A program made the translations under genes and the position numbers. Below the pieces are notes generated by a model. It did no database searches. It was not told the origin of the DNA and saw nothing but the letters and a program-made list of their open reading frames with translations. Below, piece after piece: positions 12,755 through 30,783 of a DNA stretch of 64,000 bases. The stretch spans positions 62,001 to 126,000 of the IMG/VR virus record IMGVR_UViG_3300043786_000977. One strand, given 5' to 3'. Each line of letters starts with the position of its first letter. Within the stretch, counting starts at the first letter, position 1.

Positions 12755-12756
12755 AC

Positions 12757-13206
12757 ATGAAAACGGCCACAATGTACGTAGCCGGTGATGGTACTCGGTT
12801 CGATACTAAAGCCCAGTGCCTTGCGTATGAGAAGCTGCTGGGTGCGATCGACGCAGCCTTCCGCGATTGTCCGCAACGTCCCGAAGACCCGCACTGTAAC
12901 TTCGCAAACGGGGGCGGGTACCTTCAGTGGACACAAGGACAACGCATACGATGTGAACGGGCGCTGCGTAAACTAATGGTTAAGCAGGTACCTAAATCCA
13001 TCGGTAACGCAATGACCATTAGTCTGGGTATGCTCTGCCGCGTGGCAGACGATAGCGGGTCGCCATTGTATAGTGCGTTGTTACGCCTCTTTCACCAGGA
13101 TGAGAAGTTGCGTGAATGGGGTCAGGGTTACTACGCCATGAATCCATTCGCAGGTAAACAACAGGAATACAAGGAAGAACCAGAACCAAAGAGGAAACAG
13201 GTATGA
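12757..13206 (+). CDS. Hypothetical protein
   Basis: YVAGDGTRF...CLAYE N-terminus common in phage proteins. Confidence 0.6.
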   Translation: MKTATMYVAGDGTRFDTKAQCLAYEKLLGAIDAAFRDCPQRPEDPHCNFANGGGYLQWTQGQRIRCERALRKLMVKQVPKSIGNAMTISLGMLCRVADDSGSPLYSALLRLFHQDEKLREWGQGYYAMNPFAGKQQEYKEEPEPKRKQV

Positions 13207-13496
13207 GTTTAACCCCTGAACTTAAACATCAACTCTACGCGTTGCGGCGCGAAGATATTGAGGAGGCGTGGGATATCCTGCGCAAAGCGACCGTCAAGTT
13301 ATCACAAGCAGCGACATTGAGTTTCCAGCGAGGACAGAAAGTCCTGTGGGATTCACGGCGTAAGGGTGAAACCGTGCACGGAATTGTCAAGAAAGTCAAT
13401 CAACGTACCGTTACGGTTGAGGTACAACCCGGCGGTGCAGTGTGGCGTGTATCCGCAGATATGTTACGGTTGGATGAAGGAAAGGAAAAAGGATGA
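13203..13496 (+). CDS. SH3-like barrel protein
   Basis: GQKV...GIVKKVNQRTVTV...WRVSADML. Confidence 0.6.
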   Translation: MSLTPELKHQLYALRREDIEEAWDILRKATVKLSQAATLSFQRGQKVLWDSRRKGETVHGIVKKVNQRTVTVEVQPGGAVWRVSADMLRLDEGKEKG

Positions 13497-14056
13497 AACG
13501 AGAATTATTTCAAGATCTCATGAAGGTACACAAGACACTTACCGGCGTTAAAGCAGTAACGTGGAAACAAGGTCAGATCGGTGTAAACCTGTGGTCCTTG
13601 CTCGGTAACGTAATGCTTCAACACGCGACCAAGGCGGAGATTGCTGAGATGGTCGAAGCGGGTATTCTGTCCTCACGTGAGGCTAAACAACGCCCGTCTG
13701 CGGTTGCGCAGCCCCGTAAAGTGAAAAGCGTGCGTGTACCCGCAGGCACGAAGTTACCGCCCGACGCGTTCGTGTGCGTGCTGGGTCCGTACGGGACTGA
13801 GGTAGCAGCGAAGAGTGACGTAGAGCAGTTCAAACACCCGCAGGTGTTTCTGTATCGTTCGGCCATCTTCCCCAACCCGACGAATTTCCGGGTAAACGCT
13901 TCTGTACTGGAGGCAGTCGTCGTGAAGAACGCAGGTTCTAATCTGTTGTATCCGTTTGGAATCCGTTTAACAATCAAGGTAACGGGTGCAGTAGACCGTG
14001 TGCAGTCCTGGATTACGGAATTCAAGAACCGAACTCGCATGCTTACCATGCTGTAA
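13493..14056 (+). CDS. Hypothetical protein
   Basis: ATGA-coupled ORF. Confidence 0.6.
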   Translation: MKRELFQDLMKVHKTLTGVKAVTWKQGQIGVNLWSLLGNVMLQHATKAEIAEMVEAGILSSREAKQRPSAVAQPRKVKSVRVPAGTKLPPDAFVCVLGPYGTEVAAKSDVEQFKHPQVFLYRSAIFPNPTNFRVNASVLEAVVVKNAGSNLLYPFGIRLTIKVTGAVDRVQSWITEFKNRTRMLTML

Positions 14057-14095
14057 TTGATCACGTCATAACAGTAGATAAAGGAACACTGGAAG

Positions 14096-16279
14096 ATGAT
14101 ACTCAAAAGATTGAAACTCAGGAACTATCGTCAACACGCGGACCTCGACATCAAACTCGAAGGGACGATAATAGCGGTAGTCGGATCCAACGGTTCAGGT
14201 AAAAGTAACCTGCTTGGAGCTATTCAGTATGCATTTACTGGAGAGCAAACCGGATTCAAGAAAGCCGAACTCTTACGTTGGGGTACCAGCGAGGGTGAGG
14301 TAGTCGTCGAATTCGACCACAATGGCACTGTTGGTGAGATCAGCAGGTCCATTCATAGCTCCAGTGCATATCTGCGCTACGGAACCGAAACGTTTCGTGG
14401 TTCCGCAGCTGTGACAGATGCGCTACGTCTGCATCTCGACCTGGATAAGGATCTGATGAAGCAGGCGGTATTCGTACGCCAAGCAGAGATCGATGCAATC
14501 CTATTCACGGATCCTCGGGCACGTGAACTGGCTTTCCAGCGGTTAATGGGTATAGGCGATGCGAACAAGATCCACAAGGTCTTGGGTGACGTCATAGCCG
14601 AGATGGGTGATCCGACTAACTATGACGAGCAAATCACGGACGGTAAACGGCGCTATACCGAGATGCATGCACGGCTTCAAGGGCTGCAGGCAGAGGTACA
14701 GGCGATGACAGCCAAACGGTCAGAGATACCCGGTCTGGATGTCATCAAGGCGCAGATTACACGATTCGCAGTACACGCTGATGCTGTGTTGAAGTTTACA
14801 CAGGCTCGTCAACAGTTAACGGTGCAGGATCAGGCCGTAGCAGCAACGAAACTGCAGTTGGATGCCTTACCGCCTATCACGGGAGATATCGCGACGTATG
14901 ACCATCAGATTGCTGCGTTACAGCAGCGGTGGGCGGCGGCATTACGGTATCAGGAAGCACACGCAGCCTGGCAGAAGGCTGGTGAGGCCGTACTGGCACT
15001 GGGGACTCAACCCGTGGCACCGGAACAACTGCAGCAGGCCAAGGCTGCATATGATCAGGTAACCGCAGAAATCAACAGAATCCTGGGTAGGCATAAGCTA
15101 CACAAGGATCTGTTGACTGCGTTGGGTGCAGCACAGGCGTGTGCCGAGTGTCCAGTCTGCGGCAGTCCAATTACCGACATCAAACAACTACAGAACCGCC
15201 TAACAACGATCCTGCAAACGATTGAAGGTGAAGGTAAGACGTTACGGGATACACAACAACAGGCGGGAACGACAAAGGCACAGATGGAGCGGGCGGACGC
15301 TACGTTCCAGCAACAGTATGCCCAGCTGAGTGGGCAGCTCGCACAGGCAACGCAGTATCTGCAGCGGCAGACGGTTACAACCGATGACATGCAGGCATTA
15401 CAGGCGGAGCTCGCAAGACTGACAGCAGCTCGTCAGGCACTGATCAATCTGATCACTACACGCACCTCTGCTGAGACCGCCTATCAACAGCGTATGCTCG
15501 CATGTAAGGATTACGAGCAACGGTTACGCAGTGCTTACGAGAACGCGACGACCGTCGGTGTCACAGAACAAATGTTGGCTGAGGATGCTCAGACAGTCGT
15601 TCAGGGACTACGTACAGCGAGTGCTTCGTGGGAACAAGCGCAATCAGTACTTCAGGGGCTGGATACAGATTTGGCACGTTTAGATGGTACGGTAAAAGAG
15701 TTATCCGGAACATTGGCCACACTCGATAAGACCATCGCTGGTCTTGAATACAAACGGTCGACACAGCAAGTTCATCGCGATGTTGTGGCAACAATGACCC
15801 GAGTCCGGGATTGGTTCCATTACGGTAACGGCCCACATACTCTGTCATCCAGTGTATTGGGCGCAATGAACCAGGACGTGAATAAGTTCCTGGGACAGTT
15901 TACGGCACCGTTTACGGTAGAACCGTCCAGTGACTCTCTGGGTTTCCGTTGTCACTTCACGGATGGCCGTATGCTGCCTCCTGATGGTGCCCCGGATGCC
16001 ACTATGCTGTCCGGCGGTCAGAAGATACAGTTAGCAATTGCATTCCGCTTTGCGGCTTATTGTATGTTTGCGTCGAAACTGGGCTTGCTCAGTCTTGACG
16101 AACCCACAGTGTATCTGGATTCTAATAACGTGGGTCGGTTTTGTGATCTGCTTCAACAGATCAAGCGCGTCGCGCAAGGTATGAACCTACAGGTGCTTAT
16201 TGCCACGCATGAACGTGGTGTAATACCATTCGTAGATACAGTGATTGATCTATCAAACAACGATACAGTTAACAAGTAA
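14096..16279 (+). CDS. sbcC: Rad50/SbcC ATPase
   Basis: GSNGSGKS, coiled coil with CPVC zinc hook, LSGG, LSLDEPT, ATH. Confidence 0.95.
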   Translation: MILKRLKLRNYRQHADLDIKLEGTIIAVVGSNGSGKSNLLGAIQYAFTGEQTGFKKAELLRWGTSEGEVVVEFDHNGTVGEISRSIHSSSAYLRYGTETFRGSAAVTDALRLHLDLDKDLMKQAVFVRQAEIDAILFTDPRARELAFQRLMGIGDANKIHKVLGDVIAEMGDPTNYDEQITDGKRRYTEMHARLQGLQAEVQAMTAKRSEIPGLDVIKAQITRFAVHADAVLKFTQARQQLTVQDQAVAATKLQLDALPPITGDIATYDHQIAALQQRWAAALRYQEAHAAWQKAGEAVLALGTQPVAPEQLQQAKAAYDQVTAEINRILGRHKLHKDLLTALGAAQACAECPVCGSPITDIKQLQNRLTTILQTIEGEGKTLRDTQQQAGTTKAQMERADATFQQQYAQLSGQLAQATQYLQRQTVTTDDMQALQAELARLTAARQALINLITTRTSAETAYQQRMLACKDYEQRLRSAYENATTVGVTEQMLAEDAQTVVQGLRTASASWEQAQSVLQGLDTDLARLDGTVKELSGTLATLDKTIAGLEYKRSTQQVHRDVVATMTRVRDWFHYGNGPHTLSSSVLGAMNQDVNKFLGQFTAPFTVEPSSDSLGFRCHFTDGRMLPPDGAPDATMLSGGQKIQLAIAFRFAAYCMFASKLGLLSLDEPTVYLDSNNVGRFCDLLQQIKRVAQGMNLQVLIATHERGVIPFVDTVIDLSNNDTVNK

Positions 16280-20237: not shown

Positions 20238-20256
20238 GCTATCAAAGGAGTAACAC

Positions 20257-20982
20257 ATGTGGAAACCTATCCGTGCGGCCCGAGGTATCGTAATCGTGGC
20301 AGACACGACATCAAGTTGGTTAATTCCATGGTTCTACGGTTGTTTCCGTAAACATAATGCGTACCCGGTGCATCTGTTACCTCTAGGTTTACCCGAGTCT
20401 GAGTTACGAGATATCAAGCAACTGGGTATTGAGATCAGCACAGAACAACCCATTCTTAAAGGATGGTGGGCGAAACCCCAAGCTATTATGGGTGCTGGAT
20501 TCGAACGTGCTGTGTGGTTAGACTTGGATTGTGAAGTCAAGGGTAGTATTGATTTCTTATTCGAACTGCCAACAATGTATCTAGGTATGCATATTGATCA
20601 CCCGGCATGGGGTCATTTCAATCGGTGTGACGGGTACCTGCAACCAGACGAAGTGATCTACAACAGTGGCGTCATCGCTGTAGCTTACGGCCAGCATGCT
20701 ATACCGCTATGGCATGATGCTTGTGCCTCGTTGTTCGCACCCGGCGATCAGTCAACATTCACGCGGCGCTACGGGCAATATAACCTGGGCGATCAGGAAG
20801 TGTTGTCACGCGTTATTCGTGCACACAAGGTACCTGTCTACGAGATCACGACCCGCTATAACAACATACGCTTAGAGCCCCAGAATCCGGATGCCGTGAT
20901 CGTACACCATACAGGTCCCGGTAAAGAACAGATACGGAAACAGATACTGAAACAGCACGATAACCGCCAAGTCGTATTATAA
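20257..20982 (+). CDS. GT-A fold glycosyltransferase (GT8-like)
   Basis: WWAKP, WLDLD (DxD), YNSGV, GDQEVL, IVHHTG. Confidence 0.8.
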   Translation: MWKPIRAARGIVIVADTTSSWLIPWFYGCFRKHNAYPVHLLPLGLPESELRDIKQLGIEISTEQPILKGWWAKPQAIMGAGFERAVWLDLDCEVKGSIDFLFELPTMYLGMHIDHPAWGHFNRCDGYLQPDEVIYNSGVIAVAYGQHAIPLWHDACASLFAPGDQSTFTRRYGQYNLGDQEVLSRVIRAHKVPVYEITTRYNNIRLEPQNPDAVIVHHTGPGKEQIRKQILKQHDNRQVVL

Positions 20983-20990: not shown

Positions 20991-21019
20991 TTGCGTTTGT
21001 TCGGTCGATCGGATATAGT
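20991..21019 (+). promoter_or_regulatory. sigma70 promoter for the RAMP-helicase-replication operon
   Basis: TTGCGT-N17-TATAGT. Confidence 0.7.
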
Positions 21020-21068
21020 CGAGATCATTATCTGAACCGGACACGAACCGGACATCGAAAGGGGTAAT

Positions 21069-21530
21069 ATGAAAGACGCAAAGTTCACGCTTGAATTCAC
21101 GAGTCATGTATTGGCAAACGGGACCGGGCCTAAAGGCGAACCAGACCACTTCCAACGTGACGGGCAAAACCAGTTGATATTCCAGCAGAGTTGGTTTCAT
21201 TCAGCATTCACACGGGCAATCGAGATCGCTCGTATTCGCGGTGTAAAGGCCAGTGACATCCAGGTCGATCTCACGTTTACTGCACCTACGCAGATCTATA
21301 AGCGCAGGTATGGTGAGAGCAAGTATCGGACGCATGAAGCGATCATGCCAGGTACCCGTGTTGTGTTCTGTGCGTTAGTTGCAGACCAAGTGACGGACCA
21401 GATATTGAAAACGTTGCTTGAACGCATGGGCAAGTTTATCGGATTATCTCCGTATGGCTATCGCCTCGGTTATGGCAAATTCAGTGTAGCAGATGTTACA
21501 GTTGCACCCAGTGACGCAGCAATACAGTGA
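21069..21530 (+). CDS. Stand-alone RAMP (Cas7/Csm3-like single RRM) protein
   Basis: FTLEFTSHVLANG, FQRD..NQLIFQQSWFHSAF, HEAIMPGTRVVF, terminal G-loop IGLSPYGYRLGYGKFSV. Confidence 0.65.
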   Translation: MKDAKFTLEFTSHVLANGTGPKGEPDHFQRDGQNQLIFQQSWFHSAFTRAIEIARIRGVKASDIQVDLTFTAPTQIYKRRYGESKYRTHEAIMPGTRVVFCALVADQVTDQILKTLLERMGKFIGLSPYGYRLGYGKFSVADVTVAPSDAAIQ

Positions 21531-21596
21531 CACAGTGTAGTTACTGTTGTCGCTAACCCCGGGCAGGGTTGGTGATAATAATCGCAAGAAGGACAC

Positions 21597-23144
21597 ATGC
21601 AAGAGACCATCATTCGATGGGGCGACGGCTACGTTCATGTAGAGCCGGCGTTCCCTGACACGCTTTTAAAGAAGTTGAAGTATTGGCGCCGCTCCCTTGA
21701 ATGGAGCGAAGAACAGATGCGCCGTATTGCGTTAGGTCAGTTCGAAGAGCTGTACAACATCCGTACCTGGATTGATCCACAGACGCAACAGTACTGTCAA
21801 CAGTTGACTACCCTCCCGGGGTTCGTACACCGCATCAAGGAAACGCTCAAGGAGGCCGGCTGGACGTATACAGTCATCGACGAGCGTACACCCATGCCAG
21901 AACCTGATTTGCATAAGGCCTTTGCAGGGCTCTACGATCATCAACTCGAGTGTGCCTACGTCGCACTCAAATCCGGCGGGGGGATCATCGCCTGTCCTAC
22001 AGGTTGGGGTAAGACCCATATCATGAAGGCAATCGTGAACGCGTATACGTCTGAGGCCCTAAAGCTGCGGGGTACCCCACTGACGGTAGTATCTGCGCCC
22101 GATAAAGATATCGCAGCCAAGGATTACCGTGATCTGAAAGCCATGCTTCCGAATCGGGAAGTCGGTTTGGTCATGACTGGGTATTCAAATTTCTCCGACG
22201 ATGTCCAGGTTATCACGCTGGATAGTCTACACCGTATCAACGCCGACGAGGTCGGTGTACTCATTGTAGACGAGGTACACGCTGCAGCCTCGGATAAACG
22301 CGCTGATTCAATCGTGGCTATGCGTCGGGCAGTCCGGTGGGGCGTGAGTGCCACACCTACAGGACGCTTCGACGGGCGTGACCTGGTAACCGAGGGCTTG
22401 TTTGGTCCCGTGGTTTATACCCGGACATATGGCGACGGCGTGAAGGACGGCGCTCTGGTACCTATTACGGTATACTGGGTCAAGTGCCCGGAGCCGGCGA
22501 TCGGGATGCCGAAGTTCGAGGCTTATTCGACGCGTGTAGGCCGGTACCGTAATGGTGTATGGCGTAACAAGAATCGCAACGCCTTCATCGGTGAGATTAT
22601 GCGACGGATTCCAGACTCGATGCAGACGCTCTGCATTATGCAGTACTTGGACCAGATGGACGCAATCTATCCACTCTGCGGTACGGGGACCACGACGGTT
22701 CACGCAGTCACAGATCCAGTAGAGATCGCGAAGTTCAAGAATCTGATAAGTATCACACCGCCGGAACGCAGGGAGATCTATCGTAAGATGGAGGCTGCGG
22801 AAATCAAACGTATCCTGAGTACGTACGTATACAAACAAGGTGTCAATTTCCCACATTTGGCCGTTGTAATTAACGCGGGTGGCGGCGGTAGTGATATCGT
22901 TGCCAAGCAGATCCCAGGGCGTGAAAGCCGTAAGACTGCAACCAAGGAACGTTCGTACCTCGTTGATTTCTGGCACCCTTGGGATAAGGTGAAGAACGAC
23001 AAGGAACGATGGGTAGCGGGACCGATTCATGCAGACGACCAATCACGGGAAAAAGCTTATAATCATCTGGGGTTTGAACAAGTATGGGTAGAGGACTTAA
23101 ACGGATTGCCGTTTCTCGAACAACCGAGGACATCAGTCGAATAA
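21597..23144 (+). CDS. Superfamily 2 DNA helicase (UvsW/XPB-like)
   Basis: PTGWGKT, DEVH, SATP, GVNFP, QIPGR. Confidence 0.92.
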   Translation: MQETIIRWGDGYVHVEPAFPDTLLKKLKYWRRSLEWSEEQMRRIALGQFEELYNIRTWIDPQTQQYCQQLTTLPGFVHRIKETLKEAGWTYTVIDERTPMPEPDLHKAFAGLYDHQLECAYVALKSGGGIIACPTGWGKTHIMKAIVNAYTSEALKLRGTPLTVVSAPDKDIAAKDYRDLKAMLPNREVGLVMTGYSNFSDDVQVITLDSLHRINADEVGVLIVDEVHAAASDKRADSIVAMRRAVRWGVSATPTGRFDGRDLVTEGLFGPVVYTRTYGDGVKDGALVPITVYWVKCPEPAIGMPKFEAYSTRVGRYRNGVWRNKNRNAFIGEIMRRIPDSMQTLCIMQYLDQMDAIYPLCGTGTTTVHAVTDPVEIAKFKNLISITPPERREIYRKMEAAEIKRILSTYVYKQGVNFPHLAVVINAGGGGSDIVAKQIPGRESRKTATKERSYLVDFWHPWDKVKNDKERWVAGPIHADDQSREKAYNHLGFEQVWVEDLNGLPFLEQPRTSVE

Positions 23145-23728
23145 ATGTCACCGCCATGGCGCTCTGGGACACGTACTACGCGTACATGCACGAGCGCCAT
23201 GGCCGTCCCATGCCGCCGCATCAGTATGCAGGGGATACAGTGAATTGGCATAAGACATTCTGGCCCACGGCAGAACTGTGTTATGACAAACAGTGGGATC
23301 CCCAGGACTACGTAACGAACGTACTCGAACGCTTAACGATAAACCGTATCTACATCAAGCCGGCGTGTTTGCGTGATCACGAACGCCAGGATCAGTACCA
23401 GAAACAACTGATCAAGACGACAGTTGATTACGACATTGATACCGAATGGCATAGTCTGATCGAGGAACTACTTACCTATATGGCAGATGGTTCAAGCGAA
23501 AACAGTGTGCTGCTTAGTCCGATGACACCGTTTCCGGCTTGGTTTAGATTGGCATATCCCGAACGCTTAGACGAACAGTTATTCGGATTGTATGGACCAG
23601 CTGGACGTAAAGAATTTGCAGCCAATAGGCGGCTGCGTGATTTCGTACGAAAAGAATCATCAAAGACGTTTGCACAGCTTGAAGAACGCTGGGGCCGTTT
23701 CGGTGATTTGGAGGTATTAGTTCAATGA
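23084..23728 (+). CDS. Hypothetical protein in replication operon (start uncertain)
   Basis: Fills the gap between two helicases; ATGA overlap downstream. Confidence 0.6.
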   Translation: MGRGLKRIAVSRTTEDISRINVTAMALWDTYYAYMHERHGRPMPPHQYAGDTVNWHKTFWPTAELCYDKQWDPQDYVTNVLERLTINRIYIKPACLRDHERQDQYQKQLIKTTVDYDIDTEWHSLIEELLTYMADGSSENSVLLSPMTPFPAWFRLAYPERLDEQLFGLYGPAGRKEFAANRRLRDFVRKESSKTFAQLEERWGRFGDLEVLVQ

Positions 23729-25191
23729 TCTCACCTTATACACGCGACTTTCAGATACAGTTGTTGATTAACCTACTTCGGGACAAGAAGTTCTTCGAAG
23801 AGACCGTAGGTCGGTTACATCTAAGTGATTTCGATTTGCCGCCCTGCCGACTCATATTCGAGATCGCCAGGACGTATTTCCTAAAGCACCGAGAGTTACC
23901 GCCGTTCCGTGTGATCGAGTTGGAACTCATACAGACGCTTCAATATCCGTCACTGGAGTACGAGACTGTATTGCAGGAAGCGGAACACGAATCCCTAGCG
24001 GGCATCATGAGTATGTTCGCACGTAGCGCACCTTCCGACCTGGCGGTACCGTACTACCGTGAGAAACTGCACGGGTTCATGAGCCACATGCGGTTAGCTG
24101 CAGCCAAGGGCCTCGGATTGACGGCAGAGCAGGAGTTGGCGGAAAGCGTCCGTATCCATAGCGAGGTGTCCAAGGTAGGGCGTAATAGAGTGATCCTCGT
24201 GAACGCGACATCACGGCCGCCAGACATGTCAGCAGTGCTTGGCGGACGTATCGGTATAGGACTCAACAAGGTCGACAAGTTGATCAACTACGGGTTGACA
24301 TCGGGTCAGACAGGTATGGTCGTAGCATGTACGGGTATCGGTAAGACCAACACAGGGCTAAACATGTGCGTGGCCGCGGCGCTGAAGAACACGCGCTCGT
24401 TGTTCATGACACTCGAAAATACAGTGGATATGATTCATAATCGTATCTTCGGTATGTTTGCCCATATTGAAGCCCAACACCTGATTCAACGGTCGTTACT
24501 GGATAAGAACTCGGCATGGCGGCTTGACTTCGTAAGCGGCGATGCTTTCAGGTACCACAACTATATCACCATCGCGGACTGCACACAACGCCCGCATGGG
24601 GTGGATGACATAAAGGACATAATAAGCGTCTGGTTGGAAGACCAGATAGAACGGCTTGGACACAAGGAAGAAGAGTGTCGTCTGATTAATGTTGACTGGA
24701 TCGAGAAAATAGTCGATGCTGGTATCGTAGGGATACATAAGAACATGAGCACGGCAGACCGTATTAAGCATCGGATGGAAGCCCTTGCGGAAATCAATCG
24801 CAGTTTCAAGAAGATACTGTGGACTTCAACACAAGGAACACGAGCCGCACAGAATCATGAGATCATCGTACGCGGTGACATTGCAAATAGTATTCACGTG
24901 ATGGATCCGTTGGATCTGTGTATCGGATTGGCCCCGTCAGTAATCGCAACAGATACACGGGACGACGATGACGTAACGAATCCTGTTTGTGACCGGCGCT
25001 TGAACGTATCGCTGCTCAAGACACGAGAATCGGCAGCAACAGGTAGACATAGACAGGTTTATCAAGGAAAGACATTGCGGCTATGGGATGACGAGAGTCA
25101 ATTTACAGCCGCCACACAATTAGCTGACCAGTGCAACATGGACGGACTTCTGAAACTAATGGCACCACAATCAGTGACACCCGGTAAATAG
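23725..25191 (+). CDS. Replicative DnaB-like (SF4) helicase
   Basis: ACTGIGKT, MTLEN, INVDW, WTSTQ, LLKTRE. Confidence 0.85.
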   Translation: MISPYTRDFQIQLLINLLRDKKFFEETVGRLHLSDFDLPPCRLIFEIARTYFLKHRELPPFRVIELELIQTLQYPSLEYETVLQEAEHESLAGIMSMFARSAPSDLAVPYYREKLHGFMSHMRLAAAKGLGLTAEQELAESVRIHSEVSKVGRNRVILVNATSRPPDMSAVLGGRIGIGLNKVDKLINYGLTSGQTGMVVACTGIGKTNTGLNMCVAAALKNTRSLFMTLENTVDMIHNRIFGMFAHIEAQHLIQRSLLDKNSAWRLDFVSGDAFRYHNYITIADCTQRPHGVDDIKDIISVWLEDQIERLGHKEEECRLINVDWIEKIVDAGIVGIHKNMSTADRIKHRMEALAEINRSFKKILWTSTQGTRAAQNHEIIVRGDIANSIHVMDPLDLCIGLAPSVIATDTRDDDDVTNPVCDRRLNVSLLKTRESAATGRHRQVYQGKTLRLWDDESQFTAATQLADQCNMDGLLKLMAPQSVTPGK

Positions 25192-25203
25192 GACACAGTT
25201 ACA

Positions 25204-26190
25204 ATGTATAATCCGGTGCAATTGGAGGCATTCCTCCTGCAACGGTTCGGAACAGTTAGAAGAGGTCACGGTAAAAAAGGCCTGGAACTAATAACCAAAT
25301 GCCCGGTTTGCGGTAAGCGTAAGCTATCCGTGAACCCGAACACTGGCCTTTATCAGTGTTGGCGTGGTTGTGTTTCAGGACACGTGGATAAACTTCTTGG
25401 CGACATCCGAGCCATGAAACTCACGACATTCGCGCCTAAGCCCGTATCTGTGGCAAGGGACGTCGACAGTCCGGGGGAACTGATCCCCCTGACGACACTC
25501 GATGACGATCATCAGGCTTCTGTCTACCTACAGCAACGCGGCTTCAATGTCCGCATGCTGGAGGACCACTACGGCTTCCGGTATTGCCGGCAAGGTAAGA
25601 AGTATGCCAACGGGTTATTCGACACAACCAACACGATCATCATTCCTGTCTACAAGGGTGGGACTCTGATTGGTTGGCAGTCACGTCTGCTCTATAATCC
25701 AGACGGGCTCGACGATCGGGCCTGTGAGGGATTGGGGTTCATCAAGGATGAAGATGGGGACTGGGTCAAGCCGCCTAAGTACTTCACAATGCCGGGACTG
25801 GACAAAGGTAAAATACTCTGGAACTACGACTGGGCGCGTCAATCTGACATTGTAGTGGTATGCGAAGGTGTCTTTGACGCCGTCGCCGTCGGACGTTGCG
25901 CTGTAGCTTGTTTCGGTAAGGGGCTTACCGACAACCAAGTAAACATGCTTAAGGAGTACTGGGATCTCGTTGTACTCCTGCTTGACCCAGGTGACGCAGA
26001 CAAACAGATGGCGCTATTGGATCAGTCGTCACTGATGAATAACGCGTTACCTGTGCACCTAGAAGGGTACAAGGATGCGGGCGAAGCGCCACAGGCAGAA
26101 ATCTGGCGACAGATCGATCAGGCAATTGCGGATCACCCGATCCTCGCAGCAAATAAACGGACCCTTGATACCTATCGTTTTGTGGTGTAA
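25204..26190 (+). CDS. DNA primase (Zn finger plus TOPRIM)
   Basis: CPVC...CWRGC, CEGVFDA, LDPGD, YKDAGE. Confidence 0.9.
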   Translation: MYNPVQLEAFLLQRFGTVRRGHGKKGLELITKCPVCGKRKLSVNPNTGLYQCWRGCVSGHVDKLLGDIRAMKLTTFAPKPVSVARDVDSPGELIPLTTLDDDHQASVYLQQRGFNVRMLEDHYGFRYCRQGKKYANGLFDTTNTIIIPVYKGGTLIGWQSRLLYNPDGLDDRACEGLGFIKDEDGDWVKPPKYFTMPGLDKGKILWNYDWARQSDIVVVCEGVFDAVAVGRCAVACFGKGLTDNQVNMLKEYWDLVVLLLDPGDADKQMALLDQSSLMNNALPVHLEGYKDAGEAPQAEIWRQIDQAIADHPILAANKRTLDTYRFVV

Positions 26191-26192
26191 TA

Positions 26193-26507
26193 ATGAAGTC
26201 TTTATTAGCATATAAACTGTTGCGTGTGCGCAAGGATTCATCATTGGGTCCGTTGTTCATCAATTGTCGCCAGCGTATTGAACCTGGCAAATGGTTAAAA
26301 GCGGAAGCCCATCGCCGGAAGGGTTATGCCTTCCGGCCGGGCTGGCACTGTACAGCGAAACCGTACGCCCCGCACTTGTCCACGAAAGGACGGGCGTGGT
26401 TTGCGGTACTCGTACGTGATTACGTGACCTACACTCGGCCTGCGGCACAAGGCGGTCAATGGATACTTGCGCAAAAAATGTGCGTATTACGCCTAGGTGT
26501 GCAATGA
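26193..26507 (+). CDS. Phage hypothetical protein
   Basis: AYKL...PLFIN...RPGWHC...QGGQW pattern. Confidence 0.65.
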   Translation: MKSLLAYKLLRVRKDSSLGPLFINCRQRIEPGKWLKAEAHRRKGYAFRPGWHCTAKPYAPHLSTKGRAWFAVLVRDYVTYTRPAAQGGQWILAQKMCVLRLGVQ

Positions 26508-29272
26508 CGAAGAAAGAAAAAGTAGAGGAACCGTCACCCTATCCGATATGGATGGATGAGACGGCACGGACTGTTGAAGGTAAAATATGGCTACGGGGAC
26601 GTGGACCCTTGCCGGCACCTTTCATGTTCGTCGGTGAACGGCCTCTGGAAAAAGAGGTCAAGGCAAAGCGGGTGTTTCACGGCGCCACCGGTGAATTACT
26701 TAATACACGGCTCGTGATGAATGGTTTCGATACTGCGTCTTGCTATCTGACAAACGCAGTCAAGTACCCGATCCCCCGAAACAAGAACGCGGCGGCCAAG
26801 GACTTGAAGGTGTGTCACGCGATGCTCGAAGAAGAAATCAAGCGCTGTAATCCGAAGGTGATCGTATGCCTAGGATCAGCTGCCCTGCGTGCAGTCGTGG
26901 GCCGTGATATGAACATATCCTCGATTCGAGGGGAGTTAGTACGTGATCCGGTGCGCAATGTAGACATACTTGCGATGCATAATCCGGCATACGTGTTACA
27001 CAATCCGGAAGTCATGGCTGCGTTCGATCGGGATATCTGTGAACTCGTAAGGTATCAGCGCGGCGAACAACCGATGCTGGACCCTGCCGACTGGGTCGAA
27101 ATCCGGACCGTGGCCTGGCTACGTGAATTCGTAGCCAGCGTCTTTGCGGAACAGGCGAATCCTGTTCTCGTAATAGACATGGAATGGAACGGTAAGACAT
27201 GGATGGATCCCGATCGGTATATTCGGACTATCCAGATCTGTCATAAACCGGGTCAAGCTGTGATTGTAGTCATGCGTGGCGAAAACGGTGTACCGGCAAT
27301 GGACGATGAACCGGAAGCCTGGAGAATTCTTAAGACGTTACTTGAGGATCCCCGGGTGGGTATCATCGGACATAATGCAATCGCGGATGGTCACTGGCTA
27401 CTCGGACAGAACATAGATATCCGACCACGTGTGATATGGGACACGATGCTCGCTGAGTTCCTGCTGCATGAGACAGGACCGTGGGGTCTGGAGGAGGTGA
27501 CACTACGGTACACAAATCACCGGCGCTACTCCCTAAACCTGGAGATGTGGGTAAATGAGCATAAGACTGAATGTAAACATGGTTACGGCCCCGTGCCCGA
27601 GAGCTTGTTGTTTCCATACGGGGCTATCGACGTAATAGGTCCACGGCAAATTGCTGAGAAGCAGTATCCGTTGGTCGCTGCCGAGTTTATGCAGCCCCGT
27701 GGATTACGCGGACAATATCCGAGCCTGTGGCAAACCACGTTGCGGACACAGGAACTGTTGTATGAGCTCGAACGTAACGGGATGGCCATAGATACGGAAC
27801 GTCTGGAGCAGCTCATCGTCGCATATCAACGTGTGCGTGCACAGTTACTGGGTGTTGTTACAACCGAGGCTGCTGCAGCTGGTTTCATTGAATTCAGTCC
27901 GACGTCCGTACAAGACGTTCAGAAGATGTTGTTTCAAGTTCTGAAACTCCCGCCTGTTAAAACAACCGAAGGGCGTGCCTGGGTTGATGACGTGGGTAAC
28001 CAGGGTTTGGATAATCCAACGGAATCGACACCGTCAACGGATAAGACAACACTTGAGATCCTGGAAGACGAACATGCCCTGGTACACCACCTACTGCAGT
28101 TTCGTCGAATTGATCAGAGTTGCAAGACATGGTTACGGCATCCTAAAGAGGGTGAAGATGAAGTCTCCAAGGGCGGAGGAATAGGTGCCAAGATCTGGGC
28201 AGATGGCAGGATTCATGCACGGTTTTCGCAACTAGCAGAAACCGGTCGTTTTCGTACAGCACAGCCCAATGTGCAGAACTGGCCCAAGAAGGCAGAAGGA
28301 TATATGGAAGAGATCTTCGGGAAGGACAATATGCCTCCCGGGATCCGGACTATTATCGTTCCTGCCCCTGGTTATGTTCTGATGGAAGGAGACTTCGTAC
28401 AGGCTGAGTTGTTCGTACTAGCTGCGCTTTCGGGCGATCAGAATATGATGTCGGCGTTAACGACACCGGGGCGCGACTTACACGACGTTACGGCGATAAC
28501 CGCATTCAAATTGAAGGTATACGATCCGCAAGGTAATGAGGTACCGGAATCCGTACTAATTGATCTTGCTAAGAAGAATCTACCAAAAGGATCCGAGAGT
28601 AAGGAGTTCAAGAGTTTCGTAAAGACACTACGTTACGTTGATCTGAGAGGCAAGGTGATGACACGTGACGAATTTAAAGAGACGATACGGGTGTCCGCAA
28701 AAAACGTGAATTTCGGGATTCCTTACGGACGCGGCGCGTTGGATATCGCTCGACAGGTCAAGGCCGAGACGGGCAGTAAGCAGACGATACAAGAACTCGA
28801 AACAGACTTGAGTGAGATTGTGCGTGTATGGAAAGAAGAAACATACGCGACAGCCTGGGCATACATGCGACGGTGTGCACAGTCTGTATACGATCCTGGG
28901 TATATCAAAAATCCCTGGGGTCGTTATCGCCGTTTCCCTCGAGCACGAAATGACGAAGAACGTGCTGACGTGGAGCGTCAGGCACAGAATTTCCCGATTC
29001 AATCCACAGTTGCGGACACGGCGATGATCGCCATGGACCTGATTGCGCGATATAGGGAAGCGAACGGATTACATTTCCGTATTGTGAACCAAATTCACGA
29101 TGCGGTAATGATCGAAACACCAATTGACGAAATCGACCAGTGCAAACTTATGTACGGTGATACAATGGGCGCTATCGACATTCCAGTAGGACCACCATTC
29201 AACATACTACGATTAGGCGTTGACATGAAAATACTAACTCGCTGGGGTGAAGAAGCCAAATCAAAAGACTAG
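26504..29272 (+). CDS. polA: Family A DNA polymerase with N-terminal uracil-DNA-glycosylase-like domain and 3'-5' exonuclease
   Basis: VGERP/TNAVK/HNPAY UDG-like domain; DME, GHN..AD, YGAID exonuclease; TGR, DFVQAE, KNVNFGIPYG, IHDA polymerase motifs. Confidence 0.95.
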   Translation: MTKKEKVEEPSPYPIWMDETARTVEGKIWLRGRGPLPAPFMFVGERPLEKEVKAKRVFHGATGELLNTRLVMNGFDTASCYLTNAVKYPIPRNKNAAAKDLKVCHAMLEEEIKRCNPKVIVCLGSAALRAVVGRDMNISSIRGELVRDPVRNVDILAMHNPAYVLHNPEVMAAFDRDICELVRYQRGEQPMLDPADWVEIRTVAWLREFVASVFAEQANPVLVIDMEWNGKTWMDPDRYIRTIQICHKPGQAVIVVMRGENGVPAMDDEPEAWRILKTLLEDPRVGIIGHNAIADGHWLLGQNIDIRPRVIWDTMLAEFLLHETGPWGLEEVTLRYTNHRRYSLNLEMWVNEHKTECKHGYGPVPESLLFPYGAIDVIGPRQIAEKQYPLVAAEFMQPRGLRGQYPSLWQTTLRTQELLYELERNGMAIDTERLEQLIVAYQRVRAQLLGVVTTEAAAAGFIEFSPTSVQDVQKMLFQVLKLPPVKTTEGRAWVDDVGNQGLDNPTESTPSTDKTTLEILEDEHALVHHLLQFRRIDQSCKTWLRHPKEGEDEVSKGGGIGAKIWADGRIHARFSQLAETGRFRTAQPNVQNWPKKAEGYMEEIFGKDNMPPGIRTIIVPAPGYVLMEGDFVQAELFVLAALSGDQNMMSALTTPGRDLHDVTAITAFKLKVYDPQGNEVPESVLIDLAKKNLPKGSESKEFKSFVKTLRYVDLRGKVMTRDEFKETIRVSAKNVNFGIPYGRGALDIARQVKAETGSKQTIQELETDLSEIVRVWKEETYATAWAYMRRCAQSVYDPGYIKNPWGRYRRFPRARNDEERADVERQAQNFPIQSTVADTAMIAMDLIARYREANGLHFRIVNQIHDAVMIETPIDEIDQCKLMYGDTMGAIDIPVGPPFNILRLGVDMKILTRWGEEAKSKD

Positions 29273-29281
29273 AGGTTCATT

Positions 29282-30703
29282 ATGGGATTCAATGATCAAG
29301 CAAAAGTATTAACAGGTGCTCGTGGAGCACGGAAGTTCATCTTCAAAGATGGCGTCCGCTACAAGCACATGACGGGGCAGCAGCCGATCGTATTTCGACT
29401 GATGCCTTCGTTCAACCCGCAAGACGCGAACCCGGCAACATCATATCTGCCGTGTCTCGATCCTGCGGGTAACTTGACGGAGTGGGGCGCGCTTCTCAAG
29501 ATCGTCCGTTTCGTCGGCCACGGTAAGGGTGGATCCGGTTCACGCCAGGATCTGCTGTCGCTCAAGACATTCGAGACAGACGGCCATCCGCGGTGGTGTC
29601 CGTTGGATGCGTTGTATTCGACGATCGTTGCTGATCCGAATACCTGGGGTTATCTGATCGATGACGGTGACCGCAAGGATAAGAACCGTCCACGTGCATC
29701 ATATAACCGGGCGGCAAATCACCTGATTTGCAACGTTCTGGATATCAACGGTACTCAGTTGGGTGTACAGTTGGGCGTGTTCACGCAAGGCGCATCGAAT
29801 AAGTTGATCGACCGTAAGGATGGCCTCGTCTATCAGCCGAACGCAGCGCCGAACGCGGAAGAGGTGGCGAAACAGAACTATATGTGGGCGTACGCGAATG
29901 GCGATATGACCTGCCCGAACTATGCCCCGGTACTCGTTGTCGAGAAGGGGGATGATAAGGGTGAGTTCTCTGCATATAAGATCTCGATCGCACAGGACCA
30001 GTCACGGCGTATTATCCGTCGTCAGGTCGATCAGACACTTATGGCGCAACGGTATAACCTGTCGACGTACAGTATTCCCGAACAGTCGTTCCTGAATGTC
30101 CCGTCAGAGGAAGATCTGGTGCAGTCACTGATCCAGTTGTTGAACGGACGTTCACCGCTCGGATATCACGAACACGCTCTGCTCAAGATCGCGTTCCCGA
30201 ACTTCCAGATTCCTGAACCGCCGTCTGCACCAGGTGCAATGCATTCAGTTCAGTCTGGATTCGCACCAGCGCCTGCCATGGCTCCCGGGATGATCCCAGG
30301 AGCGGTTCCAGGTTACGGCGTGCCTCCTGCAGCCCCCGTGCCGGGACCGCAGTACCCCTCAGCCCCCGTGCCAGGACCGCAGTACCCCTCAGCCCCCGCG
30401 CCGGGACCGCAGTACTCCTCGGCCCCCGTCGTGGGCGGTGGATTCCCTGGACCACAGGCAGTCCCGCAAGCAGCCCCTGTCCCCGGTGGATTCCCGGGAG
30501 CACAGGTAGCTCCGCCTGCGGCTCAGGCGGCGGGGCCTGTCGTGGGTCAACAGGTACAGGGTGTGATGGCTAATGCCCAACAGGCTGAGCCTGCAGCACA
30601 GCCTGCAAGCAATGTCGTGGCTCCAGGTGATCCCCTGGCGCCTGGCTTTGCACAAGGTGACTTCCTGGCACGTATCCGTGCAGGACAGGCACCGGGTAAG
30701 TAA
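29282..30703 (+). CDS. Probable single-stranded DNA-binding protein with Pro/Ala/Gln-rich tail
   Basis: Lies between polymerase and recombinase; FRLMP, CPL, ICNV pattern as in gp32-like SSBs; low-complexity tail. Confidence 0.6.
   Translation: MGFNDQAKVLTGARGARKFIFKDGVRYKHMTGQQPIVFRLMPSFNPQDANPATSYLPCLDPAGNLTEWGALLKIVRFVGHGKGGSGSRQDLLSLKTFETDGHPRWCPLDALYSTIVADPNTWGYLIDDGDRKDKNRPRASYNRAANHLICNVLDINGTQLGVQLGVFTQGASNKLIDRKDGLVYQPNAAPNAEEVAKQNYMWAYANGDMTCPNYAPVLVVEKGDDKGEFSAYKISIAQDQSRRIIRRQVDQTLMAQRYNLSTYSIPEQSFLNVPSEEDLVQSLIQLLNGRSPLGYHEHALLKIAFPNFQIPEPPSAPGAMHSVQSGFAPAPAMAPGMIPGAVPGYGVPPAAPVPGPQYPSAPVPGPQYPSAPAPGPQYSSAPVVGGGFPGPQAVPQAAPVPGGFPGAQVAPPAAQAAGPVVGQQVQGVMANAQQAEPAAQPASNVVAPGDPLAPGFAQGDFLARIRAGQAPGK
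30331..30429 (+). repeat. 30-bp coding tandem repeat x3 (APVPGPQYPS)
   Basis: agcccccgtgccgggaccgcagtacccctc and two variants. Confidence 0.9.
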
Positions 30704-30728
30704 CGACAGCTTGTCGTTATTGACGTGT

Positions 30729-30754
30729 ACCCCTGGGGCTCCGGCCCCAGGGGT
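30729..30754 (+). terminator. GC-rich stem-loop
   Basis: ACCCCTGGGGC-TCCG-GCCCCAGGGGT. Confidence 0.6.
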
Positions 30755-30783
30755 CTTATACTAATAGTCGTGAGGAGATAATT

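What the first reader, a model, noticed from the sequence alone, without database searches (positions are those of the whole stretch)
20991..21596. Orphan Cas7-like RAMP gene heading the replication operon: candidate non-CRISPR RNA-guided system
Seen: a 153-aa protein with the ordered RAMP motifs: beta1 FTLEFTSHVLANG; FQRD..NQLIFQQSWFHSAF at the place of the IPGSSLKG helix; HEAIMPGTRVVF; helix followed by the G-rich loop GLSPYGYRLGYGKF. It has its own promoter and is followed by the SF2 helicase, DnaB, primase and polymerase genes. No other cas gene or CRISPR array is in the window. Known: Cas7/Csm3 RAMPs polymerise on guide RNA. Inference: a minimal phage RAMP that binds a non-CRISPR RNA or ssDNA, acting as an RNA-guided regulator or anti-competitor system, an anti-CRISPR decoy subunit, or a replication accessory. 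The unexplained structured RNAs in this window are candidate partners. I found no periodic guide array beside the gene.
Basis: partly seen in the sequence, partly recalled or inferred. Interest (0 to 1): 0.85.

Follow-up and report, generated by a model that had tools for sequence, protein, structure and literature searches.

The report
Guide-less Vipr-like RAMP beside phage helicase
A freshwater jumbo phage encodes a very small relative of the CRISPR Cas7 and phage "Vipr" RNA-binding proteins, but it has no repeat-guide RNA array and sits as the first gene of the DNA-replication operon next to an XPB-like helicase, so it looks like a replication helper rather than a programmable weapon.

Summary
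ORF 21069-21530 (+) encodes a 153-aa protein whose confident model (pLDDT 92) matches only Cas7-type RAMPs in the PDB: Csm3, type VII Cas7, Cmr1 and Cas7-11 (E 3e-7).

The kind is already known. Preprints from 2026 describe VIPR systems: a minimal phage RAMP (Vipr), YNNGG-repeat guide RNAs, and an accessory gene. The family profile detects the solved SUSP1 Vipr (E 0.003), type II Viprs (hhalign 93%) and 32 array-adjacent Viprs (best E 5.5e-9).

It fails other defining VIPR tests:
- No period-5 array occurs in the 64-kb window or within about 10 kb of the gene in 12 relatives, while controls score the maximum.
- Most GGY-reading residues are replaced by other invariant residues.
- The alpha-helical bundle is missing.

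The gene is always immediately upstream of an XPB-like SF2 helicase and often overlaps it. It follows Mre11/Rad50 genes and precedes DnaB, primase and UDG-PolA. This holds down to 26% identity, and it is the best-conserved protein of the module. It was not found in cellular genomes.

My best reading (confidence 0.4) is a single-stranded nucleic-acid-binding partner of the helicase in replication or recombination. The main rival (0.3) is a cryptic VIPR with an unrecognised guide. I rate it a new variant of a known kind.

The parts
20991..21019 (+). Promoter-like element: -35 TTGCGT (20991-20996), 17-nt spacer, -10 TATAGT (21014-21019)
   Evidence: Read from the sequence. It aligns with TTGAC-type -35 and T/A-rich -10 elements upstream of the gene in relatives. 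It falls below the threshold of the consensus scan, so it is tentative.
21034..21059 (+). Direct repeat of 11 nt, 2.2 copies (GAACCGGACAY), in the predicted 5' leader just before the ribosome-binding site (AAAGGGG, 21058-21064)
   Evidence: Tandem Repeats Finder and the sequence itself. It is not conserved as sequence in relatives. Its function is unknown; it could be an operator.
21069..21530 (+). Gene for a 153-aa minimal single-RRM RAMP (Vipr-like, Cas7-like)
   Evidence: ORF. Model pLDDT 91.9. Foldseek top hits are Csm3, type VII Cas7, Cmr1 and Cas7-11. Weak hits to Csf2/Cas7 models in PADLOC and NCBIfam. Homology to Vipr. More than 100 clusters at 90% identity and 135 at 50% identity, all unnamed.
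21186..21230 (+). Helix alpha1 (residues 40-54), preceded by the conserved F-x-R-D...QQSW segment; this is the RAMP 'IPGSxxKG-like' RNA-binding surface
   Evidence: DSSP on the model. Conservation. This block aligns with array-adjacent Viprs.
21291..21344 (+). Thumb-like beta-hairpin (residues 75-92) carrying invariant R79, R87, H89 and E90
   Evidence: DSSP strands 75-82 and 85-92. Invariant columns. E90 aligns with the thumb Arg (R138) of SUSP1 Vipr.
21441..21479 (+). Gly-rich loop (residues 125-137), family motif G-x-S-P-[YF]-G-x-x-x-G-[YF]-G
   Evidence: Invariant G125, S127, P128, G130, G134 and G136. It lies between alpha2 and beta4. The motif occurs in 163 of 239 family members and in 0 of 120 type II Viprs.
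21532..21577 (+). Two adjacent RNA hairpins between the RAMP stop codon and the helicase start
   Evidence: RNA fold -22.7 kcal/mol, z = -2.9. Not conserved: relatives have small ORFs, short gaps or overlapping genes here.
21597..23144 (+). XPB/Rad25-like SF2 helicase (515 aa), the invariant downstream partner gene
   Evidence: Pfam ResIII, DEAD and Helicase_C. PDB XPBII E 2e-11. NCBIfam repair_heli_XPB, weak. Adjacent to or overlapping the RAMP gene in every family locus examined.
11642..16279 (+). Upstream context: Mre11-like (11642-12754) and Rad50-like (14096-16279) genes
   Evidence: NCBIfam Mre11 and Rad50 models. Conserved synteny.
23084..32088 (+). Downstream context: conserved 214-aa protein, DnaB-like helicase, Toprim primase, UDG-PolA, gp32-like SSB candidate and RecA-like protein
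   Evidence: Pfam. Atlas gp32 lead for 29282-30703. Synteny.

Best explanation
The gene encodes a minimal RAMP. It has one RRM core, helix alpha1, a thumb-like beta-hairpin and a Gly-rich loop. It belongs to the same superfamily as the Vipr proteins of phage VIPR systems and is more distantly related to Cas7 (Csm3, Csf2). In this clade of uncultivated freshwater jumbo phages it has no repeat-guide array. It is fixed as the first gene of the replication operon and is co-expressed, often translationally coupled, with an XPB-like SF2 helicase.

I propose that it is the single-stranded nucleic-acid (most likely RNA) binding subunit of a two-protein RAMP-helicase machine. That machine would act on the phage's own replication or recombination intermediates, such as R-loops, forks or D-loops. 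The RAMP would grip the displaced or priming strand through alpha1, the G-loop and the thumb, possibly as a short filament. It would position or stimulate the XPB-like translocase, much as Bax1 or p52/p8 partner XPB elsewhere.

Shown here: the fold, the homology to Vipr and Cas7, the conserved gene order and coupling, the absence of arrays, and the divergence of the GGY-reading residues. Inferred: nucleic-acid binding, complex formation with the helicase, and the role in replication or recombination.
For: Fold. A RAMP fold with high confidence. A relative's model matches PF03787 RAMP clusters in the atlas. The protein is basic, pI 9.3.

Homology. The family profile hits SUSP1 Vipr in the PDB at E 0.0031. 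hhalign against type II Viprs gives 93.4%, E 2.4e-7. It detects 32 array-adjacent Viprs, best E 5.5e-9.

Gene order. Mre11, Rad50, (variable gene), RAMP, SF2 helicase, ~200-aa protein, DnaB, primase, UDG-PolA. This order holds in all family loci with enough flank, from 100% down to 26% identity. The ORFs overlap in L011, L016, L017, L140 and L141.

Conservation. The RAMP has the highest identity of all module proteins in 7 of 7 close relatives, for example 66% against 61% for the helicase, 50% for PolA and 32% for DnaB. That is a housekeeping-type constraint.

No arrays. None in the 64-kb window or in 12 relatives, while SUSP1 and panel controls score the maximum.

Other points. The helicase is XPB-like; that XPB-type helicases work with partner proteins is established knowledge, not tested here. 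A1-derived peptide patterns found no member in 185,579 species-representative cellular genomes, unlike published VIPRs, which are mostly proviral.
Against: - No experiment or co-fold shows binding to nucleic acid or to the helicase.
- No RAMP-helicase fusion exists among 135 representatives.
- Sister phages run a similar module without the RAMP: in L142 the Rad50-like gene abuts the helicase, and in L143 an unrelated 178-aa ORF fills the slot. So it is not essential to that replisome design.
- Its nearest characterised relatives are RNA-guided DNA binders, and a helicase-associated VIPR layout exists (vipr, array, SF2 helicase in L038 and L093). The pair could therefore be a weapon with an unrecognised guide.
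- Only 64 of about 209 kb of this genome could be searched.
- The near-invariance of the G-loop, H89 and E90 suggests a specific ligand rather than generic strand binding.
Confidence: 0.4

Rival explanations
1. It is a genuine VIPR-type RNA-guided DNA-binding system, possibly the helicase-associated type, in which the XPB-like helicase is the accessory (vap) gene. The guide RNA would be encoded far from the gene or would lack a recognisable periodic consensus. It would be used against competing mobile elements.
For: - Sequence-level homology to Viprs.
- Phage-encoded, as VIPRs are.
- VIPR types III-V carry nucleases or helicases.
- My panel contains the order vipr, array, ResIII/DEAD helicase (L038, L093).
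- The aromatic G-loop residue that stacks on G2 in SUSP1 (W178) is retained as Y/F129.
- Orphan vrRNAs away from vipr are known.
- Only 64 of 209 kb were searched.
Against: - No array at periods 4-8 in the window (21 kb upstream and 43 kb downstream of the gene) or within about 10 kb in 12 relatives, whereas arrays lie beside or close to the Vipr ORF in the control loci I inspected (L003, L033, L038, L093).
- R138, D177 and R179 of SUSP1 Vipr correspond to invariant E90, P128 and G130.
- No alpha-helical bundle, which in Vipr handles the target strand.
- It is the most conserved protein of a housekeeping module.
- A1-derived patterns found no member in cellular or proviral genomes.
- The L038 and L093 helicases are only generically similar to this one, 34-37 bits.
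Confidence: 0.3
2. It is an RNA-binding regulator or endoribonuclease of the replication operon. This could be a RegA- or gp32-style translational repressor that binds leaders, including its own, or a Cas6-like processing enzyme that uses the invariant His-Glu pair.
For: - An RRM/RAMP fold with a G-loop.
- It is the first gene of the operon, with a promoter-like element and a repeat-containing leader.
- Hairpins directly downstream in this genome.
- Invariant H89, E90 and D26 and nearly invariant D31.
- That Cas6 and Cas5d RAMPs are RNases, and that T4 regA lies among replication genes, is established knowledge, not tested here.
Against: - The leader repeat and the downstream hairpins are not conserved in relatives.
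- Strict adjacency to, and overlap with, the helicase gene argues for a protein partner rather than a diffusible regulator.
- The top structural matches are Cas7-type backbone subunits, not Cas6.
Confidence: 0.12
3. It is a decoy subunit, an anti-CRISPR or anti-VIPR protein. It would co-assemble with a host Cas7 backbone or a competitor's Vipr filament and poison it.
For: It is a RAMP without its own guide. That phage proteins can mimic Cas subunits is general knowledge, not tested here.
Against: - Very high conservation and a fixed position in the replication module, whereas counter-defence genes are usually variable.
- Obligate pairing with a helicase.
- The G-loop and thumb residues differ from both Vipr and Cas7 consensus.
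- The host and its defence systems are unknown.
Confidence: 0.05
4. It is the replisome's main single-stranded-DNA-binding protein.
For: - Its position in the replication module.
- It is basic, and about 70% of members with the strict G-loop motif (163 of 239) carry a net-acidic C-terminal tail, which is short in most (median 8 residues).
- That Cas7-type proteins coat single strands is established knowledge.
Against: - A gp32-like SSB candidate with a long Pro/Ala/Gly-rich tail is already encoded after PolA (29282-30703; atlas features 0.91, structure TM 0.54-0.58).
- Sister clades lack the RAMP.
- The invariant, specific-looking loop residues.
Confidence: 0.05

Closest known systems
Vipr protein of VIPR systems (Viral Interference Programmable Repeat; SUSP1 Vipr, PDB 36pp; bioRxiv 10.64898/2026.04.26.720920 and 10.64898/2026.04.26.720927)
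   Same: - Phage-encoded, about 150-200 aa.
- A single-RRM RAMP with alpha1, a thumb and a G-loop, found outside CRISPR loci.
- Detectable sequence homology in the beta/alpha1 block and in alpha2, G-loop and beta4.
- The second half of the G-loop, G-[YF]-G-[KR]-F, is shared with some Viprs (L033, L023).
- An accessory DNA enzyme gene is adjacent.
   Different: - No YNNGG or related array.
- The first half of the G-loop is G-x-S-P-[YF]-G instead of G-x-G-[DR]-[FWY]-R-P.
- The thumb Arg is replaced by an invariant Glu.
- About 40 residues shorter, with no alpha-helical bundle.
- Embedded in a replication module and highly conserved.
- Not found in cellular genomes.
Helicase-associated VIPR loci (order vipr, vrRNA array, ResIII/DEAD SF2 helicase; seen here in IMG/VR loci L038 and L093; probably the helicase type mentioned in the VIPR preprint)
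   Same: The gene order RAMP then SF2 helicase on one strand, and the same broad Pfam families for the helicase.
   Different: - In those loci 12-20 perfect 8-unit windows of YNNGG lie between the two genes. Here the gap is 66 nt, and in relatives it ranges from a 47-nt overlap to 292 nt, with no periodicity.
- Their helicases carry zinc ribbons and are only generically similar to this one.
- Their Viprs score about 20 bits against this family's profile, compared with at least 147 bits within the family.
CRISPR Cas7 backbone subunits (Csm3, Cmr4, type IV Csf2, type VII Cas7)
   Same: The best structural matches (E 3e-7, TMq up to 0.67). Weak profile hits over the C-terminal half to Csf2 and Cas7 models.
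   Different: - Far below the family cut-offs: 19 bits against a cut-off of 130. No Pfam RAMP hit.
- No cas genes and no CRISPR array.
- Smaller, without the lid or insertion domains.
XPB-Bax1 (archaea) and XPB-p52/p8 (TFIIH) helicase-partner pairs
   Same: An XPB-like helicase encoded next to, and presumably working with, a small partner protein. This is an analogy of organisation only.
   Different: The partner here has a RAMP fold, not a Bax1 nuclease or a p52/p8 fold. No interaction has been tested.

Membership tests
RAMP superfamily (fold level) | RRM/ferredoxin-like core, beta1-alpha1-beta2-beta3-alpha2-beta4 | tested here: met
   DSSP on a model with pLDDT 91.9. 105 PDB matches at E<=1e-3, and the top 50 are all RAMPs.
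RAMP superfamily (fold level) | Gly-rich loop between alpha2 and the last strand | tested here: met
   Residues 125-137 with invariant G125, G130, G134 and G136, lying between helix 110-124 and strand 138-145.
RAMP superfamily (fold level) | Thumb (beta-hairpin projecting from the core) | tested here: inconclusive
   Strands 75-82 and 85-92 form a hairpin with conserved R79, R87, H89 and E90. I could not inspect its three-dimensional projection because no coordinates were available.
CRISPR Cas7 (Csm3, Cmr4, Csf2) | Score above the curated family model cut-off | tested here: not met
   TIGR03115 cas7_csf2 scores 19.3 bits against a cut-off of 130. No Pfam hit for the protein or for 70 relatives. 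PADLOC Cas7 hits have E 0.002-0.03.
CRISPR Cas7 (Csm3, Cmr4, Csf2) | Encoded with other cas genes and a CRISPR array | tested here: not met
   No array. No cas family among the listed PADLOC hits of 63 window ORFs. Relatives' neighbourhoods are replication genes.
CRISPR Cas7 (Csm3, Cmr4, Csf2) | Catalytic Asp in the beta1-alpha1 loop (target RNA cleavage) | not testable with these tools
   D26 is invariant among close relatives and D31 is widely conserved. Their structural equivalence to the Csm3 or Cmr4 Asp could not be checked because no residue-level structural alignment was available.
VIPR system | Vipr-family RAMP protein | tested here: met
   Met at superfamily level only. PDB SUSP1 Vipr E 0.0031. 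hhalign 93.4% over 47 columns. 32 array-adjacent Viprs detected. The type II profile's only hit among 424 window ORFs is this ORF, E 0.003. The family forms its own group: at least 147 bits within it against at most 35 bits to any Vipr.
VIPR system | vrRNA: tandem YNNGG (or NNNGG, YNNNG, NNNNG) repeats of at least 4 units flanking vipr, with a conserved tail | tested here: not met
   The window has 0 runs of 4 or more units and its period-5 signal equals that of shuffles. Twelve family loci score 5-6 of 10, as do shuffles. SUSP1 and 120 panel loci score 8-10 of 10. The any-base scan at periods 4-8 is also negative. Rfam finds only two tRNAs and no hammerhead. The remaining ~145 kb of the genome was not searched.
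VIPR system | GGY-reading residues (SUSP1 H17, R138, D177, W178, R179) | tested here: not met
   Alignments place R138 on invariant E90, D177 on P128 and R179 on G130. Only the aromatic residue, W178 against Y/F129, is kept. The motifs are mutually exclusive across 239 family members and 120 Viprs.
VIPR system | Alpha-helical bundle that accommodates the skipped target base | tested here: not met
   The model has no helix between beta1 (residues 2-10) and alpha1 (40-54). The protein is about 40 residues shorter than type II Viprs. The bundle is described.
VIPR system | Adjacent accessory (vap) gene acting on DNA | tested here: inconclusive
   An SF2 helicase is always adjacent, and helicase-type VIPR loci exist. 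However, this helicase is XPB-like and sits within a replication operon, so it may not be a vap.
VIPR system | Protein co-purifies with guide RNA and silences matching DNA | not testable with these tools
   This needs experiments.
Phage SSB (gp32-like or OB-fold) | OB-fold or gp32-like ssDNA-binding domain | tested here: not met
   The fold is RRM/RAMP. The gp32-like candidate is a different gene, 29282-30703.

The most novel reading that the evidence does not exclude
A RAMP that needs no encoded guide array and works in viral DNA replication or recombination. With its XPB-like helicase it would capture nascent transcripts or primers and build or resolve R-loops, for example for origin firing or recombination-dependent replication. 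If so, it would be either the ancestral, pre-VIPR and pre-CRISPR job of RAMP proteins, or the first known exaptation of an RNA-guided module into a replisome.
Probability: 0.25. Interest if true: 0.9.

Novelty: new variant of a known kind. Interest (0 to 1): 0.62.

Why it matters
VIPR was proposed in 2026 as the viral ancestor of CRISPR RAMPs, defined by the pairing of a minimal RAMP with pentanucleotide-repeat guides.

This family is large: 135 clusters at 50% identity. It appears ancient, and in the searches run here it turned up only in viral and metagenomic contigs. It keeps the RAMP scaffold and the RAMP-then-helicase gene order. It has no detectable guide array, it replaces most of the residues that read the repeat, and it behaves like a housekeeping replication gene.

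If it acts without an encoded guide, it would show what RAMPs can do apart from programmable targeting. That bears directly on which came first, a strand-binding replication factor or an RNA-guided weapon. If it does use a cryptic guide, it would extend the VIPR code beyond pentanucleotide repeats.

Either outcome is testable with a two-gene construct.

Tried and rejected
Searches that found nothing
- Pfam and PHROGs on the protein gave no useful hit.
- megablast and tblastn against 50,697 phage records found no match, so there is no cultured relative. The helicase has only one distant isolate hit.
- The single-protein search and the close-family profile search of PDB sequences gave only noise. 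Only the diverse profile reached Vipr.
- Rfam found only two tRNAs, with no hammerhead or other family.
- No RAMP-helicase fusion exists among the representatives.

Ideas tested and set aside
- A conserved ncRNA next to the gene is rejected. The gap to the helicase holds clade-specific small ORFs or an overlap. Only one unrelated intergenic stretch is conserved with one relative. The downstream hairpins are genome-specific.
- The (CAGTGA)n-like repeats at the 3' end of the gene reflect Pro-Ser-Asp and Ser-Asp codons, not an array.
- A replication origin at the gene is not supported. Three short direct repeats cluster there, but there is no skew or composition signal and no conservation.
- The 178-aa ORF in the RAMP slot of L143 is not a RAMP.

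Limits and tool refusals
It therefore cannot show that arrays are absent from the unsearched parts of family genomes.
- The diverse alignment was too variable for the search for related loci.
- The supplementary tables of the VIPR preprint are not held. I could not check whether its type classification already includes this family.
Full report
1. The observation

The ORF at 21069..21530 (+) starts with ATG and encodes 153 aa. It is a real, conserved gene:
- 105 clusters at 90% identity, all unnamed and all from metagenomes or viral contigs.
- 135 clusters at 50% identity in an exhaustive search.

A 40-sequence alignment (A1) shows invariant D26, F28, R79, R87, H89, E90, P94, D106, G121, G125, S127, P128, G130, G134 and G136.

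AlphaFold2 on that alignment gives pLDDT 91.9 and pTM 0.85. The elements are E2-10, E25-27, H40-54, E64-66, E75-82, E85-92, E97-104, H110-124, a loop at 125-137, and E138-145. This is an RRM core with a beta-hairpin and a Gly-rich loop before the last strand.

Foldseek against the PDB returns 105 matches at E<=1e-3. The top 50 are all RAMPs: Csm3, type VII Cas7, Cmr1/Cmr-beta subunits and Cas7-11, with best E 3.2e-7 and TMq 0.62-0.67. Independent weak signals agree:
- PADLOC typeIV_Cas7 at E 0.029 for this protein, and 7 of 40 relatives hit the same model.
- NCBIfam cas7_csf2 at E 5e-4, 19 bits against a cut-off of 130.
- The atlas model of a close relative matches PF03787 RAMP clusters with TM 0.69.
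- BFVD holds only a few uncharacterised viral RAMP-fold proteins.

2. The genome and the neighbourhood

The window is positions 62001-126000 of IMG/VR contig IMGVR_UViG_3300043786_000977, which is 208,908 bp. The same sequence occurs in many lake and freshwater DNA metagenomes from 2016 to 2025. No cultured phage is close.

The downstream genes are:
- an XPB/Rad25-like SF2 helicase (PDB XPBII, E 2e-11)
- a 214-aa protein of unknown function
- DnaB
- a Toprim primase
- UDG-PolA
- a 473-aa protein that the atlas groups with T4 gp32 SSBs (features 0.91, TM 0.54-0.58) and that carries a ~170-residue Pro/Ala/Gly-rich tail
- a RecA-like protein

Upstream lie archaeal-type Mre11 and Rad50 genes. Three genes absent from the relatives examined follow them; one is an HNH/endonuclease VII-like gene.

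The window has no CRISPR array, no cas family among the listed PADLOC hits, and no second RAMP ORF.

A sigma-70 consensus scan finds no + strand promoter. However, TTGCGT, a 17-nt spacer and TATAGT at 20991-21019 align with TTGAC-type elements upstream of the gene in relatives. The gene probably does start a transcription unit.

3. Relatives

In every family locus with enough flank, the order is Mre11, Rad50, (variable gene), RAMP, SF2 helicase, ~200-aa protein, DnaB, primase, UDG-PolA. These loci are L001/L005, L006-L012, L016, L017, L140 and L141, spanning 100% down to 26% identity.
- The RAMP and helicase ORFs overlap in L011, L016, L017, L140 and L141.
- In 7 of 7 close relatives the RAMP is the best-conserved protein of the module. 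In L005 it is 66% identical, against 61% for the helicase, 50% for PolA, 49% for the primase and 32% for DnaB.
- In helicase-anchored loci, found independently of the RAMP, the RAMP gene is present only in the clade with close, full-length helicase relatives.
- More distant phages keep a similar Rad50-helicase-primase-PolA module without it. In L142 the Rad50-like gene abuts the helicase. In L143 an unrelated 178-aa ORF fills the slot.
- A1-derived peptide patterns found no member in 185,579 species-representative cellular genomes.

4. The known system it resembles

A profile of 70 diverse members (A2) hits one informative PDB sequence, "SUSP1 Vipr protein" (36pp_D), at E 0.0031. Three 2026 preprints describe VIPR, Viral Interference Programmable Repeat. 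Its features are:
- a minimal phage RAMP called Vipr, proposed to predate the CRISPR RAMPs
- vrRNAs of 9-16 YNNGG repeats followed by a structured tail
- an adjacent accessory gene (vap), which in types III-V is a nuclease or helicase

One Vipr protomer binds each repeat. G1 is read by H17 and D177. G2 is held by R138 (thumb) and W178. Y3 is held by R179 and helix 1. An alpha-helical bundle (K33) accommodates the skipped base of the target.

I tested homology in several ways:
- hhalign of A2 against a type II Vipr alignment (A3) gives 93.4%, E 2.4e-7. The match covers only beta3, alpha2, the G-loop and beta4.
- I fetched 120 viral loci that carry at least 8 perfect YNNGG units. The type II profile finds a Vipr ORF in 83 of them.
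- This family's profile detects 32 of those array-adjacent Viprs, best E 5.5e-9. The alignments cover two blocks: the strand and alpha1 segment, and alpha2, G-loop and beta4.
- Reciprocally, the type II profile's only hit among 424 window ORFs is this ORF, at E 0.003.

The family therefore belongs to the Vipr superfamily at sequence level. It is nearer to Vipr than to any CRISPR Cas7 model. It is still a separate group: at least 147 bits within the family against at most 35 bits to any array-associated Vipr.

5. Where it fails the VIPR definition

(a) No arrays
- An exact YNNGG scan finds no run of 4 or more units in the window. The same scan finds a 12-unit run and downstream arrays in SUSP1.
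- A mismatch-tolerant GG scan gives 5-6 of 10 in the window and 12 family loci, the same as shuffles. It gives 8-10 of 10 in all 120 panel loci.
- The single-G scan is at chance.
- An any-base scan at periods 4-8 is negative. The one exception is a Pro-rich coding repeat in L010. The controls reach 18 of 18 at period 5.
- Rfam finds no hammerhead.

(b) Reading residues replaced

The alignments place SUSP1 R138 on invariant E90, D177 on P128 and R179 on G130. Only the aromatic residue is kept, W178 against Y/F129. The family motif G-x-S-P-[YF]-G-x3-G-x-G occurs in 163 of 239 members and in none of 120 type II Viprs. The Vipr motif G-x-G-[DRNE]-[FWY]-R-P occurs in 1 of 239 family members.

(c) No helical bundle

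The protein is about 40 residues shorter than type II Viprs and has no helix between beta1 and alpha1.

(d) No conserved flanking RNA

The 66-nt gap to the helicase forms two hairpins here. In relatives it is replaced by small clade-specific ORFs, short spacers or an overlap.

One similarity stands out. Panel loci L038 and L093 have the order vipr, array, ResIII/DEAD helicase. That is the same gene order, with the array exactly where this family has none.

6. Interpretation

Shown:
- the RAMP fold
- Vipr-superfamily homology
- no array within reach
- diverged base-reading residues
- ancient, strict coupling to an XPB-like helicase at the head of a replication and recombination operon
- housekeeping-like conservation
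- recovery only from viral and metagenomic contigs in the searches run

Inferred: the protein binds single-stranded nucleic acid through alpha1, the G-loop and the thumb, as all characterised RAMPs do. It forms a complex with the co-translated helicase. The pair acts on the phage's own replication or recombination intermediates.

I give this reading 0.4. The rivals are:
- A cryptic VIPR, with a guide encoded elsewhere in the unsearched 145 kb or lacking periodicity: 0.3.
- An RNA regulator or RNase role: 0.12.
- A decoy role: 0.05.
- The main SSB: 0.05, made unlikely by the gp32-like gene.

Two facts count against my preferred reading. Sister clades dispense with the protein. The invariant loop, His and Glu residues look like a specific site rather than a generic strand-binding surface.

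7. Novelty and limits

The kind, a phage-encoded minimal RAMP outside CRISPR, is known since 2026. This family differs in three defining respects and in its genomic role, so I rate it a new variant of a known kind.

I could not read the preprint's supplementary tables. It may already be listed there, for example under the helicase-associated type, and this lowers the score.

Noticed in passing
window 29282-30703 (+): A 473-aa protein conserved after PolA. It has a ~300-aa globular domain that the atlas groups with T4 gp32 SSBs, then a ~170-aa Pro/Ala/Gly-rich tail that includes a 30-nt tandem repeat of 3.3 copies (30330-30429). It is probably the phage SSB.
   Followed up: partly
L006:10708-13332, L008:10622-13192, L012:8668-10605: In several relatives the XPB-like helicase is 300-360 aa longer and carries an intein signature (Hom_end_hint in L012). 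PolA appears split or interrupted in L007 and L017.
   Followed up: no
window 18293-20982 (+): Three genes lie between the Rad50 block and the RAMP gene and are absent from the relatives examined: an HNH/endonuclease VII-like protein with Lar-like zinc ribbons (18293-19111), a phrog_10079 protein (19268-20197) and a 241-aa protein (20257-20982). This looks like a mobile insertion.
   Followed up: partly
window 26459-29272 (+): The family A DNA polymerase has an N-terminal uracil-DNA-glycosylase-superfamily domain. This fusion is conserved in all relatives.
   Followed up: no
window, ORFs not resolved (pooled scan of 63 ORFs): There is a rich nucleotide-metabolism set: ThyX, dCMP deaminase, a MazZ-like dATP/dGTP diphosphohydrolase N-domain, nucleoside 2-deoxyribosyltransferase, an Ogg-like glycosylase, an ATP-dependent DNA ligase and a PADLOC dCTPase-like hit. 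This may hint at a modified-base DNA.
   Followed up: no
window 60906-60981 and 61185-61269 (+): tRNA-Val(TAC) and tRNA-Met(CAT) lie in a 1.15-kb intergenic region.
   Followed up: no
window 59467-59576: An intergenic 47-nt tandem repeat of 2.3 copies, 71% matches. Its function is unknown.
   Followed up: no
window 3907-4222 (+): A 48/96-nt tandem repeat of 6.6 or 3.3 copies inside a coding region (ORF 3557-4507). Gly-rich hexamer repeats occur in ORF 835-2433.
   Followed up: no
window 26244-26347 versus L007:15682-15785: This is the only intergenic stretch of the module conserved with a relative (72% over 107 nt). It lies between the primase and PolA genes.
   Followed up: no
83 of them encode a type II-profile Vipr nearby. 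L038 and L093 show the order vipr, array, zinc-ribbon SF2 helicase.
   Followed up: partly
L012:1-3226: A relative encodes a very large fused RNA-polymerase beta/beta'-like protein (over 1,466 aa) upstream of the Mre11-Rad50 block. The clade therefore probably uses its own RNA polymerase and promoters.
   Followed up: no
L005:10502-10656, L006:10469-10707, L007:10511-10690; L009:10466-10757, L012:8466-8667: Two unrelated small conserved ORFs occupy the RAMP-helicase gap in different subclades. One ends ...LELHL/LELIL. The other contains RYSRV.D.
   Followed up: no
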